A DNA stretch of 63,534 bases, the filler included, from Octopus bimaculoides (taxonomy: Eukaryota), in assembly GCF_001194135.2 (NCBI RefSeq). It is 10 parts of 10 records of this genome, joined end to end, with 100 filler letters (N's around TTAATTAATTAA, not from the genome) between each part and the next. Parts side by side here need not be neighbours in the genome. Positions count along the whole stretch, not along the records: positions 28,258 to 47,400 come from NC_068993.1; 9 more parts are not named here. One strand, written 5' to 3'. Position 1 is the stretch's first letter. Each line of letters opens with the position of its first letter. The position numbers and the translations under genes were made by a program. The notes under the pieces are model-generated. The model searched no databases. It saw only the letters and a program-made list of their open reading frames with translations, and had not been told where the DNA came from. This document shows positions 44,399 to 44,778 of this stretch, in pieces.

Positions 44399-44778
44399 TT
44401 AATAGTGTAATGCAATGTTAAATCTCTGAGCGAGATATTAACAGAGATTTAACATTGCTTGTTTTCACTTTTTCGAGATCAGTGAATAATTTCACTGGAA
44501 AAAGTTATATATATATTTGCAAAGGAATGTCTTTCGCATCGAAGGTCGGCGGTTGTCGTACGCTGAAGACGGGTAAATACCCAGAAACTCGAGTCCGTAC
44601 GTATTACAGATCGAGATGGGAAAGATTACTTCCCTTTGCAAATATAGACAGGACACAGATGTGTGTCGAGAGCCAGCTGGAGGAGATGTTCTCCTGGGGC
44701 TAAAAGCAACAGTAACATCCACCCTTAGGGGTCAGCCACATTTAAGTGGCAAATATACTTCACCTTAATAGTGTAATG
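44399..44778 (+). mobile_element. Retrozyme-like non-coding insertion (~352 bp) with 14-bp target-site duplication
   Basis: Direct repeat TTAATAGTGTAATG at 44399-44412 and 44765-44778. The interior consists of consecutive hairpins plus a hammerhead motif, with no credible ORF. Confidence 0.65.
44557..44601 (+). ncRNA. Type I hammerhead ribozyme motif
   Basis: Stem I CGTACG 44557-62/44596-601; core CTGAAGA 44563-69; stem II GGGT-aaat-ACCC with a C.A mismatch at its base; GAAA 44584-87; stem III AC-tcga-GT (palindrome ACTCGAGT); cleavage triplet GTC 44593-95. Confidence 0.8.

What the first reader, a model, noticed from the sequence alone, without database searches (positions are those of the whole stretch)
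44399..44778. Candidate octopus retrozyme: TSD-flanked, ~350-bp structured non-coding insertion carrying a hammerhead
Seen: an exact 14-bp direct repeat (TTAATAGTGTAATG) brackets 352 bp with no credible ORF. The insert is CpG-rich against the CpG-poor DNA upstream and contains a type I hammerhead motif. Established: animal retrozymes are non-autonomous retroelements with monomers of a few hundred nt and minimal type I hammerheads, produce circular RNAs, and are thought to be mobilised by Penelope-like elements. Inference: this is a recent insertion of such an element, and Penelope-like GIY-YIG remnants occur in the same window. I am not aware of a described octopus family but cannot verify novelty.
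Basis: partly seen in the sequence, partly recalled or inferred. Interest (0 to 1): 0.9.

Follow-up and report, generated by a model that had tools for sequence, protein, structure and literature searches.

The report
Octopus hammerhead-carrying short retroposon, solo copy
This is a real insertion of a 352-bp non-coding mobile element that carries a hammerhead self-cleaving RNA motif; related copies exist in two other Octopus genomes, so it is a new octopus example of an already known kind of element, not a new kind.

Summary
An exact 14-bp direct repeat (44399-44412 and 44765-44778) brackets 352 bp. The insert has no ORF with any homologue. Its CpG observed/expected ratio is 0.92, against 0.28 and 0.40 in the flanks. 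It contains one complete type I hammerhead (44557-44601, cleavage after C44595).

I sampled about 148 kb of Octopus sinensis and O. bimaculoides DNA and found three relatives. One is a 299-bp copy with the hammerhead arm, and a paralogous empty site defines its ends. One is a 235-bp copy without that arm, flanked by a 9-bp duplication. One is a roughly 70-nt fragment truncated at the 5' end. All four end at ...CUUYAC. This pattern indicates target-primed retroposition of the strand that carries the hammerhead.

The two hammerhead copies differ by compensatory changes in helices I and II and by the known core covariation C3-G8 to U3-A8.

The "retrozyme" label is only partly supported. No copy is tandem, circular RNA is untested, and no link to a Penelope-like element was found. 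An O. sinensis Penelope-like remnant followed by a minimal hammerhead-like motif was seen, but it shows no similarity to the insert.

Verdict: a solo copy of a hammerhead-bearing SINE-like retroposon family, apparently undescribed in octopus. Novelty: new member of a known kind. Interest: moderate.

The parts
44399..44412 (.). Left copy of the 14-bp target-site duplication TTAATAGTGTAATG
   Evidence: Exact match to 44765-44778. It is the only non-repeat-family exact 14-mer direct repeat within 1.5 kb in the piece. It is not part of the element: the relatives L007a, L004 and L007b have unrelated sequence beyond the same termini.
44413..44764 (+). Full-length 352-bp copy of the non-coding retroposon; the RNA strand is +
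   Evidence: CpG observed/expected 0.92 against 0.28 and 0.40 in the flanks. No ORF has homologues. RNA fold z = -9.45. It is homologous to L007 13964-13666(-) with E = 1.5e-32 and to L004 5115-5248 with E = 5e-8.
44412..44458 (+). 5'-terminal perfect hairpin: arms 44413-44428 and 44442-44457, 13-nt loop, plus the G44412-C44458 pair
   Evidence: Read from the sequence and present in the minimum-free-energy fold. The left arm and loop resemble the 5' end of L004 only weakly (17 of 21, E = 0.21). The hairpin is absent from the 5'-truncated L007a. Its origin is unexplained.
44469..44485 (+). Conserved block TTTTTCGAGATCAGTGA, followed by the small hairpin 44480-44497
   Evidence: 16 of 17 positions are identical in L007a, against roughly 70-77% identity overall. 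The T5 run argues against RNA polymerase III read-through (inference).
44513..44645 (+). Hammerhead arm: a long imperfect hairpin closed by ATATTTGCAAAGG / CCTTTGCAAATAT
   Evidence: Fold -49.1 kcal/mol, z = -5.6; the L007a arm gives -58.6, z = -6.7. The closing stem is conserved, with an A-U to G-C covariation at its outer pair. The arm is missing from the L004 relative.
44557..44601 (+). Type I hammerhead motif. Helix I is 44557-62 with 44596-601. The core CUGAAGA is 44563-69. Helix II is 44570-83. GAAA is 44584-87. Helix III with its loop is 44587-94. Predicted cleavage lies between C44595 and C44596.
   Evidence: Descriptor hit with 0.01 expected per 19 kb. Rfam RF00163 scores 20.6 bits, E = 0.0033, aligned to model positions 1-45 of 45, with helix II left unaligned. 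Enforcing the three helices costs only 4 kcal/mol in the whole element. Two copies cofold as a double hammerhead with an 8-bp helix III (-34.7 against 2 x -12.6 kcal/mol).
44646..44764 (+). 3' module, shared by all four copies: three conserved hairpins, including the terminal one (GCCAC 44735-39 / GUGGC 44746-50), and the fixed 3' end ...AUAUACUUCAC(C)
   Evidence: Alignments A2 and A5. All copies end at CTTYAC plus 1-6 nt. The terminal stem covaries, C-G to U-A. This is the presumed recognition and priming region for the reverse transcriptase (inference).
44765..44778 (.). Right copy of the 14-bp target-site duplication

Best explanation
The 352 bp at 44413-44764 is a full-length solo copy of an Octopus family of short, non-coding, non-autonomous retroposons.

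Shown: the copies have a fixed 3' end and variable 5' ends, and the target duplications vary in length (14 bp, 9 bp, none). This is the signature of target-primed reverse transcription of the + strand RNA starting at a structured 3' module. That same RNA carries, in an internal hairpin arm, a canonical metazoan type I hammerhead. The ribozyme's pairings, including the C3-G8 core pair, are kept by compensatory changes between diverged copies.

Inferred: the ribozyme has been under selection in the lineages that keep spawning copies. As a family, the element works like the hammerhead-bearing SINE-like elements and non-LTR retrozymes of other animals. Helix III is too weak for a single motif (2 bp plus the palindromic tetraloop UCGA), so efficient self-cleavage should need two hammerheads pairing as a dimer, as in multimeric or tandem transcripts. 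Cleavage after C44595 would then give unit-length RNA that a tRNA ligase could circularise.

Inferred for this locus: it has one hammerhead, with a C.A pair at the base of helix II, so on its own it is most likely an inert offspring copy. The reverse transcriptase that moves the family (Penelope-like element or LINE) is not identified.
For: Insertion:
- Exact 14-bp duplication and a sharp CpG contrast.

Family:
- L007a (O. sinensis, 299 bp) matches with E = 1.5e-32. L004 (O. bimaculoides, 235 bp) matches with E = 5e-8. L007b is a roughly 70-nt 3' fragment.
- A paralogous empty site, L007 9556-9440(-), reads ...CTGTTATATCTGAAC|TGTTATAATA.... The filled site has AGACAG...CTTTAC(AT) between the same flanks.
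- L004 is flanked by the 9-bp repeat TTGAACTAT.
- All four copies share the 3' terminus.

Hammerhead:
- Chance expectation is 0.01 per 19 kb. Rfam RF00163 aligns end to end.
- On the two-copy alignment, 92.6% of cells pair. Four pairs change on both sides: the arm-closing stem A-U/G-C, helix I U-A/C-G, the core C3-G8/U3-A8, and helix II G-C/A-U. Slid controls give 0-1.
- U3-A8 is a documented natural core covariation (PMC4209133).
- A mismatch at the base of helix II, a 2-bp helix III with a tetraloop, and a unit of about 350 nt match the axolotl Rtz_353/HHR_Amex2. That ribozyme cleaves weakly as a monomer and well as a dimer (PMC7229834).
- The double-hammerhead cofold is favoured.

Non-coding.
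Against: - Only two hammerhead-bearing copies were available. 36 of 500 shuffles reach the observed covariation, so the statistics are weak.
- The window hammerhead is below Rfam's gathering score (20.6 against 34) and has C.A at 10.1-11.1.
- The L007a hammerhead gets no Rfam hit at all.
- One relative (L004) lacks the hammerhead arm, so the ribozyme is not needed for insertion.
- No tandem copy, no RNA data and no partner element were found.
- L007a has no visible target duplication.
- CpG richness is not specific to young DNA in Octopus.
Confidence: 0.7

Rival explanations
1. The element is a classical animal non-LTR retrozyme. Master copies are tandem arrays, their transcripts self-cleave to 352-nt (or 366-nt) monomers that are ligated into circular RNA, and a Penelope-like element reverse-transcribes the circle. 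This locus is a one-unit product of that process.
For: - The canonical type I hammerhead has a dimer-dependent helix III.
- Unit size, low GC, strong self-pairing and a duplication longer than 4 bp fit the published description (PMC7229834).
- Solo monomers are common offspring of retrozymes (bioRxiv 10.64898/2026.07.22.740005).
- A candidate Penelope-like remnant with a minimal hammerhead-like motif downstream exists in O. sinensis (L005). It was identified by motifs only.
- Tandem 551-bp units with a hammerhead-like motif exist in L002.
Against: - None of the four copies is tandem.
- None of the copies starts at the hammerhead cleavage site. The window copy and, on weak similarity, L004 begin within a few nt of the same 5' sequence, and all four share one 3' end. 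This suggests a linear RNA with set ends.
- The 14-mer is not part of the unit, since the relatives lack it. It is therefore not rolling-circle terminal redundancy.
- There is no sequence similarity to the L005 Penelope-like remnant or to the L002 units.
- L004 moved without the hammerhead arm.
Confidence: 0.3
2. The element is an ordinary LINE-dependent SINE-like retroposon. The hammerhead arm is an inherited passenger that no longer has any role. The motif persists only because the copies are related.
For: - The fixed 3' stem-loop module, 5' truncation and variable duplications are typical of LINE-driven retroposition.
- L004 lacks the arm yet inserted.
- Each of the two hammerheads departs from the consensus: C.A at 10.1-11.1 in the window, U3-A8 in L007a.
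- Covariation statistics from two sequences are weak (36 of 500 shuffles).
Against: - The two copies are only about 70-77% identical, yet 25 of 27 and 25 of 27 arm pairs still pair. The changes in helix I, helix II and the core pair are compensatory.
- The only two of the twelve core positions (3-9, 12-14, 15.1, 16.1) that changed are the two partners of one pair, and they changed to a variant known from natural hammerheads.
- No tRNA, 5S or 7SL head is present.
- No LINE in 216 kb of sampled DNA shares the tail.
Confidence: 0.15
3. The region is not an insertion. The 14-mer repeat and the hammerhead-like string are chance features of AT-rich, repeat-rich DNA. Alternatively, the segment is a MITE or other DNA transposon.
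For: In AT-rich DNA a 14-mer repeat is not astronomically rare. Allowing 2 mismatches, shuffles give a mean of 0.49 matches per window.
Against: - The repeat abuts, to within 1-5 nt, the termini defined independently by relatives in other genomes.
- A paralogous empty site exists for L007a.
- There are no terminal inverted repeats, and the duplication lengths differ between copies.
- A complete hammerhead is expected 0.01 times per 19 kb.
Confidence: 0.03

Closest known systems
Animal non-LTR retrozymes (Cervera & de la Pena 2020, PMC7229834), especially the axolotl Rtz_353 with HHR_Amex2 and the mussel and coral families
   Same: - Non-coding unit of about 350 nt, GC below 50%, highly self-paired.
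- Canonical type I hammerhead with a 6-bp helix I, a 4-position helix II with a mismatch at its base, and a 2-bp helix III capped by a palindromic tetraloop, so it is predicted to work as a dimer.
- Target duplication longer than 4 bp.
- A candidate Penelope-like remnant with a hammerhead-like motif occurs in the same genus.
   Different: - All four copies seen are dispersed single units with a fixed 3' end and 5' truncations. None is tandem.
- Circular RNA is not shown.
- One relative lacks the hammerhead arm.
- No sequence link to a Penelope-like pLTR was found.
Sm-alpha / Sj-alpha SINE-like retroposons of schistosomes (Ferbeyre 1998 and Laha 2000, as cited in PMC2770079)
   Same: Short (about 330 bp), dispersed, high-copy, non-autonomous retroposons that carry an internal type I hammerhead.
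   Different: The schistosome elements have a tRNA-derived head that ARAGORN or RepeatMasker recognises. The octopus element has no tRNA-like or other small-RNA head, and it has T4 and T5 runs near its 5' end.
Minimal hammerheads in the pseudo-LTRs of Penelope-like elements (Cervera & de la Pena 2014, PMC4209133)
   Same: Type I topology, palindromic helix III positions, and the U3-A8 core covariation (seen in L007a). An Octopus example lies in L005, about 130 nt after the stop codon of the endonuclease-like reading frame.
   Different: The window motif has a true helix III and a short helix II with no G10.1-C11.1 pair. The element has no RT or endonuclease ORF, is not in a pseudo-LTR arrangement, and is not similar in sequence to the L005 element.
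Stringent LINE/SINE pairs that share a 3' stem-loop, such as eel UnaL2/UnaSINE1 (from my own knowledge, not checked here)
   Same: A conserved, covarying terminal stem-loop next to a fixed 3' end, with 5'-truncated copies and variable target duplications.
   Different: No partner LINE with this tail was found, there is no short-repeat or poly(A) tail, and a ribozyme is present.

Membership tests
Type I hammerhead ribozyme (Rfam RF00163) | Conserved core C3 U4 G5 A6 N7 G8 A9 ... G12 A13 A14 ... A15.1-U16.1 H17, in type I order | tested here: met
   CUGAAGA ... GAAA ... U C at 44563-44595. Rfam aligns model positions 1-45 of 45.
Type I hammerhead ribozyme (Rfam RF00163) | Three helices around the core, normally with a G10.1-C11.1 pair | tested here: inconclusive
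   Helix I has 6 of 6 pairs. Helix III is 2 bp plus the tetraloop UCGA. Helix II has 3 G-C pairs, but 10.1-11.1 is C.A. L007a has G10.1-C11.1. Axolotl HHR_Amex2 is a precedent for a mismatch at this position.
Type I hammerhead ribozyme (Rfam RF00163) | Score at or above the curated gathering threshold (34 bits) | tested here: not met
   20.6 bits, E = 0.0033, and only in a 71-nt search. Nothing is reported in the 19-kb or 421-nt scans. L007a gives no hit.
Type I hammerhead ribozyme (Rfam RF00163) | Covariation that supports the fold | tested here: met
   Four double-sided changes in 27 pairs between the two copies, including C3-G8 to U3-A8. Slid controls give 0-1, and 36 of 500 shuffles reach the observed value. 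The sample is small.
Type I hammerhead ribozyme (Rfam RF00163) | Self-cleavage at the H17 site | not testable with these tools
   This needs in vitro transcription of monomer and dimer constructs.
Animal non-LTR retrozyme (PMC7229834) | Type I hammerhead inside a short (150-450 bp), low-GC, non-coding repeat unit | tested here: met
   352 bp, GC 0.42, no ORF with homologues.
Animal non-LTR retrozyme (PMC7229834) | Head-to-tail tandem arrangement, from dimers to multimers | tested here: not met
   The window copy, L007a, L004 and L007b are all single units. Only about 148 kb of Octopus DNA plus the 19-kb piece could be examined, so arrays elsewhere are not excluded.
Animal non-LTR retrozyme (PMC7229834) | Target-site duplication longer than 4 bp, when present | tested here: met
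   14 bp in the window and 9 bp at L004. None is visible at L007a.
Animal non-LTR retrozyme (PMC7229834) | Expressed as unit-length linear and circular RNA | not testable with these tools
   No transcriptome data were accessible.
Animal non-LTR retrozyme (PMC7229834; bioRxiv 10.64898/2026.07.22.740005) | Co-occurrence with hammerhead-bearing Penelope-like elements, and sequence relation to their pLTR | tested here: inconclusive
   Co-occurrence in the genus rests on L005: RT ORFs, a GIY-YIG-like motif and a minimal hammerhead-like motif. These were recognised by motifs; Pfam supports only RVT_1. There is no sequence similarity between the insert and that single element. No Penelope-like remnant lies in the piece.
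Classical SINE (RNA polymerase III, small-RNA-derived head) | tRNA-, 5S- or 7SL-like 5' head with A and B boxes | tested here: not met
   ARAGORN finds nothing, and there is no Rfam small-RNA hit in 44380-44800. T4 and T5 runs at 44462-44473 would terminate polymerase III (inference).
Retroposon inserted by target-primed reverse transcription (LINE/SINE or Penelope type) | Fixed 3' end, 5'-truncated copies, variable-length target duplications, and contrast between empty and filled sites | tested here: met
MITE / DNA transposon | Terminal inverted repeats and a target duplication of fixed short length | tested here: not met
   The termini CAATGTT... and ...CTTCACC are not inverted repeats. Duplications are 14, 9 and 0 bp.

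The most novel reading that the evidence does not exclude
The octopus family may be a dispersed, SINE-like retroposon in which the hammerhead arm is an optional, exchangeable module. The arm is present in the window copy and in L007a and absent from L004. In this reading the family spreads as a linear RNA with set ends, without any tandem or circular stage, possibly using a LINE rather than a Penelope-like element. The ribozyme would then be kept by selection for a role other than monomer excision, for example trans-dimer cleavage that controls the level of the transposition template. That would be a new life-cycle variant of hammerhead-bearing retroelements.
Probability: 0.2. Interest if true: 0.55.

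Novelty: new member of a known kind. Interest (0 to 1): 0.4.

Why it matters
Hammerhead-bearing non-autonomous retroelements are known from schistosomes, mussels, corals, insects and amphibians. In the searchable literature I found no description of such a family in cephalopods. The only related record is a count of 235 Rfam 'hammerhead 1' hits in the giant squid genome (PMC6962438).

This family scores below Rfam's threshold, so standard annotation would miss it. If it is abundant and expressed, it would add a ribozyme-dependent source of small structured or circular RNA to a lineage already noted for active retroelements.

The dispersed, fixed-ended copies, and one relative without the ribozyme arm, could help settle how and by which reverse transcriptase animal retrozymes are moved. 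For this one locus the practical consequence is small. It is an intergenic solo copy about 10 kb downstream of the last exon of a steroid-dehydrogenase-family gene.

Tried and rejected
Searches that found nothing:
- Rfam at 19 kb and at 421 nt reported no hammerhead, only microsatellite 'miRNA' noise and a hairpin artefact (ohsC). The hit appeared only when 71 nt were searched.
- ORFs inside the insert were used as handles to find other copies. There was no k-mer candidate, no exact entry, and no HMMER hit among 1.84 billion representatives.
- Exact and degenerate hammerhead patterns in the metagenome, viral and prokaryote-genome collections gave 0 hits. These collections hold no cephalopod DNA.
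- blastn of the insert against the piece found no second copy.
- A covariance model of the hammerhead arm, searched over 196 kb, found only its two seed sequences.

Dead ends in sampling Octopus DNA:
- ENA contigs of sample ERZ21867824 (L008-L010) share none of the piece's repeats (no blastn hit at E <= 1e-20), so they gave no usable Octopus sample, and they hold no copies.
- Two O. bimaculoides proteins were not on record.
- The LINE RT search returned no named Octopus proteins.
- A 41-kb Rfam E-value scan of L002 and L005 returned only microsatellite noise.
- Rfam does not call the L005 minimal hammerhead-like motif.

Readings rejected:
- MITE: there are no terminal inverted repeats and the duplication length varies.
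- The 14-mer as rolling-circle terminal redundancy: the relatives lack it.
- tRNA-derived SINE: ARAGORN finds nothing.
- A Penelope-like remnant in the piece: the regex and Pfam scans of ORF segments were negative.

Full report
**1. The observation**

TTAATAGTGTAATG occurs exactly twice on the + strand, at 44399-44412 and 44765-44778, bracketing 352 bp. In the 19-kb piece it is the only exact 14-mer direct repeat within 1.5 kb that is not part of an internal repeat family or a microsatellite.

The insert has 14 CpG and an observed/expected ratio of 0.92. The 1 kb upstream gives 0.28, the 1 kb downstream 0.40, and the whole piece 0.35.

Its longest ORFs are 82 aa (TTG start) and 76 aa (GTG start). 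They have no homologue, no exact database entry and no HMMER hit.

The + strand folds at -126 kcal/mol, against -81.9 +/- 4.7 for shuffles (z = -9.45).

**2. The hammerhead**

At 44557-44601 the + strand reads CGUACG-CUGAAGA-C GGG UAAAUA CCC A-GAAA-CUCGAG-UC|CGUACG.
- All core positions are present, in type I order.
- Helix I is a perfect 6 bp.
- Helix III is A-U and C-G closed by the palindromic tetraloop UCGA.

A descriptor of my own finds this one hit in the piece. It expects 0.01 per 19 kb, and none of 300 simulations had a 6-bp helix I.

Rfam's Hammerhead_1 model aligns end to end, with helix II left unaligned, but scores only 20.6 bits against a gathering score of 34. The hit is reported only when 71 nt are searched. 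It is not reported in the larger scans.

The weak point is the base of helix II, where 10.1-11.1 is C.A. The axolotl retrozyme ribozyme HHR_Amex2 has a U.U mismatch at the same place, the same 2-bp helix III with a tetraloop, and a 350-nt unit. It cleaves 22% as a monomer and far better as a dimer (PMC7229834).

In the whole element, enforcing the three helices costs only 4 kcal/mol. Two copies of the motif cofold as a double hammerhead with an 8-bp helix III (-34.7 against 2 x -12.6 kcal/mol).

**3. The organism and a sample of its genus**

A gag-protease-RT ORF at 30098-31132 is 83% identical to an Octopus sinensis protein and 84% identical, over part of its length, to an O. bimaculoides protein. 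The window is therefore from an Octopus.

No collection of cephalopod DNA can be searched directly, and pattern scans of the metagenome, viral and prokaryote collections were empty. I therefore fetched the loci of seven annotated Octopus transposon proteins, about 148 kb in all.

nhmmer with the insert found three relatives:
- **L007a** (O. sinensis): aligned over L007 13961-13669 on the minus strand, E = 1.5e-32, covering insert positions 54-350 and including the hammerhead arm.
- **L004** (O. bimaculoides): 5115-5248, E = 5e-8, covering the last 135 nt.
- **L007b**: about 6457-6530 on the minus strand, only the last roughly 70 nt.

**4. These are insertions with a common 3' end**

A diverged paralogue of the repeat that hosts L007a lies at L007 9556-9440 (minus strand). 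It reads ...CACTGTTATATCTGAAC|TGTTATAATATT.... The filled site reads ...CACTGTTATATCTGAAC|AGACAGTTTTTCGAAATC...GTATACTTTAC(AT)|TGTTATAATAC....
- This fixes L007a as a 299-bp insertion at L007 13964-13666.
- It starts at the window equivalent of about 44460, so it lacks the first ~50 nt.
- It has no visible duplication.

L004 (5021-5255, 235 bp) is flanked by the 9-bp repeat TTGAACTAT. On a weak match, it begins a few nt before the same TTAAATCTC as the window copy (17 of 21, E = 0.21).

All four copies end at CTTYAC plus 1-6 nt, and their flanks are unrelated. The 14-mer is therefore target DNA, not part of the unit.

A fixed 3' end, 5' truncation and duplications of 14, 9 and 0 bp are the signature of target-primed reverse transcription of the + strand. 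That is the strand that carries the hammerhead.

The shared 3' module has three conserved hairpins. The terminal one covaries: GCCAC/GUGGC against GCCAU/AUGGC.

**5. Conservation of the ribozyme**

The window and L007a copies are only about 70-77% identical. Both are CpG-rich and lie in unrelated flanks.

The L007a hammerhead reads CGCCCG-UUGACAA-GAGG CAACUA CCUC-GAAA-CUGCGG-UC|CGUGCG.

On the arm alignment, 92.6% of cells pair, against 23-54% when the partners are slid. Four pairs changed on both sides while keeping the pair:
- the outer pair of the arm-closing stem, A-U to G-C;
- helix I, U-A to C-G;
- helix II 10.2-11.2, G-C to A-U;
- the tertiary core pair, C3-G8 to U3-A8.

Slid controls give 0-1 such pairs. 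With two sequences the shuffle control is weak: 36 of 500 shuffles reach the observed value.

U3-A8 is a known natural covariation, first noted in schistosome Penelope-like hammerheads (PMC4209133). L007a also has the canonical G10.1-C11.1.

I read this as selection on the ribozyme in the lineages that generate copies. Two sequences cannot prove it.

**6. What does not fit a textbook retrozyme**

Animal non-LTR retrozymes are defined as tandem repeats whose transcripts self-cleave and are circularised.
- All four copies here are solo.
- None begins at the cleavage site.
- The L004 relative has no hammerhead arm at all.
- A covariance model of the arm finds no further copy in 196 kb.

Solo monomers are a recognised product of retrozymes, so tandem masters elsewhere are not excluded.

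No Penelope-like remnant lies in the piece.

In O. sinensis L005 I found what I read as a Penelope-like remnant. It has RT ORFs with LPKIHK...RPIVS and YVDD and a GIY-YIG-like stretch. About 130 nt after the stop codon lies a minimal hammerhead-like motif, CUGAUGA-A-GGCUGG...CAGCC-GAAA-CG-UU. Pfam supports only the RVT_1 match, and Rfam does not call the motif. It shows no similarity to the insert.

The element has no tRNA-like head, and it has T4 and T5 runs near its 5' end. It is therefore not a classical polymerase III SINE either.

**7. Verdict**

Three specifics remain unproven: the circular RNA stage, mobilisation by a Penelope-like element, and recency.

The closest known relatives in behaviour are the non-LTR retrozymes, especially the axolotl Rtz_353 type, and the schistosome Sm-alpha/Sj-alpha SINE-like elements.

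I found no description of such a family in cephalopods. The only related record is a count of Rfam hammerhead hits in the giant squid.

I rate it a new member of a known kind, of moderate interest.

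Noticed in passing
window 34199-34510 (+): Stop-to-stop segment matching the C-terminal half of Pfam Steroid_dh (PF02544, profile positions 70-150 of 150, E = 4.4e-17). It is probably the last coding exon of a host 3-oxo-5-alpha-steroid 4-dehydrogenase / TECR-like gene. The insertion lies about 10 kb downstream, which gives a handle for finding the orthologous site.
   Followed up: partly
window 29334-31135 (+): LTR-retrotransposon fragment: DUF7083 gag-like ORF, zinc knuckle, aspartyl protease and the start of RT. 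It is 83% identical to O. sinensis 'K02A2.6-like'.
   Followed up: yes
window 41502-42200 (+), with repeats at 28258-28570, 31416-31966, 42468-43461 and 46085-46464: LINE RT fragment (RVT_1). Its 3' region, or a SINE-like tail, is repeated four times in the piece, with 65-67-bp internal subrepeats and (GAT)n ends. This family differs from the hammerhead element.
   Followed up: partly
L002 16831-20297 (O. sinensis CM016865.1): Tandem and inverted units of about 551 bp, 97-99.6% identical. Each carries a hammerhead-like motif, UCUGAG-CUGAUGA-(25-nt interrupted helix II)-GAAA-CGUACG-UU|CUCAAA, next to (TA)n microsatellites. This is a candidate true tandem retrozyme or a Penelope-like pLTR array in Octopus. 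It is unrelated in sequence to the window insert and is not called by Rfam.
   Followed up: partly
L005 17062-18684 (-) and 19233-19471 (O. sinensis CM016861.1): Candidate Penelope-like element remnant, recognised by motifs (Pfam supports only RVT_1). It has RT ORFs and a frameshifted GIY-YIG-like stretch (YSCGRLYKGET...EEH). A minimal hammerhead-like motif lies about 130 nt after the stop codon. Upstream is an inverted pair of U3-A8-type hammerhead-like motifs.
   Followed up: partly
window 44412-44458: A perfect 16-17-bp inverted repeat sits at the very 5' end of the insert. Only its left half has a weak counterpart in L004. It could be a snap-back or inverted-duplication product of insertion, or a subfamily feature. 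It is unexplained.
   Followed up: partly
window 44186-44290, 32110-32186 and 37390-37530: (TA)n/(TG)n microsatellites produce all the 'mir-297/mir-466/mir-3149' Rfam hits, which are artefacts. One lies about 110 bp upstream of the insertion site.
   Followed up: yes
window 46465-46533: A run of 69 N inside the piece, which is an assembly gap.
   Followed up: no
window 46800-47400: The most CpG-rich stretch of the piece (observed/expected up to 1.16). It holds an ORF cut by the piece's edge (47134-47400 +) and a 144-aa ORF on the opposite strand. Neither has a Pfam hit.
   Followed up: no
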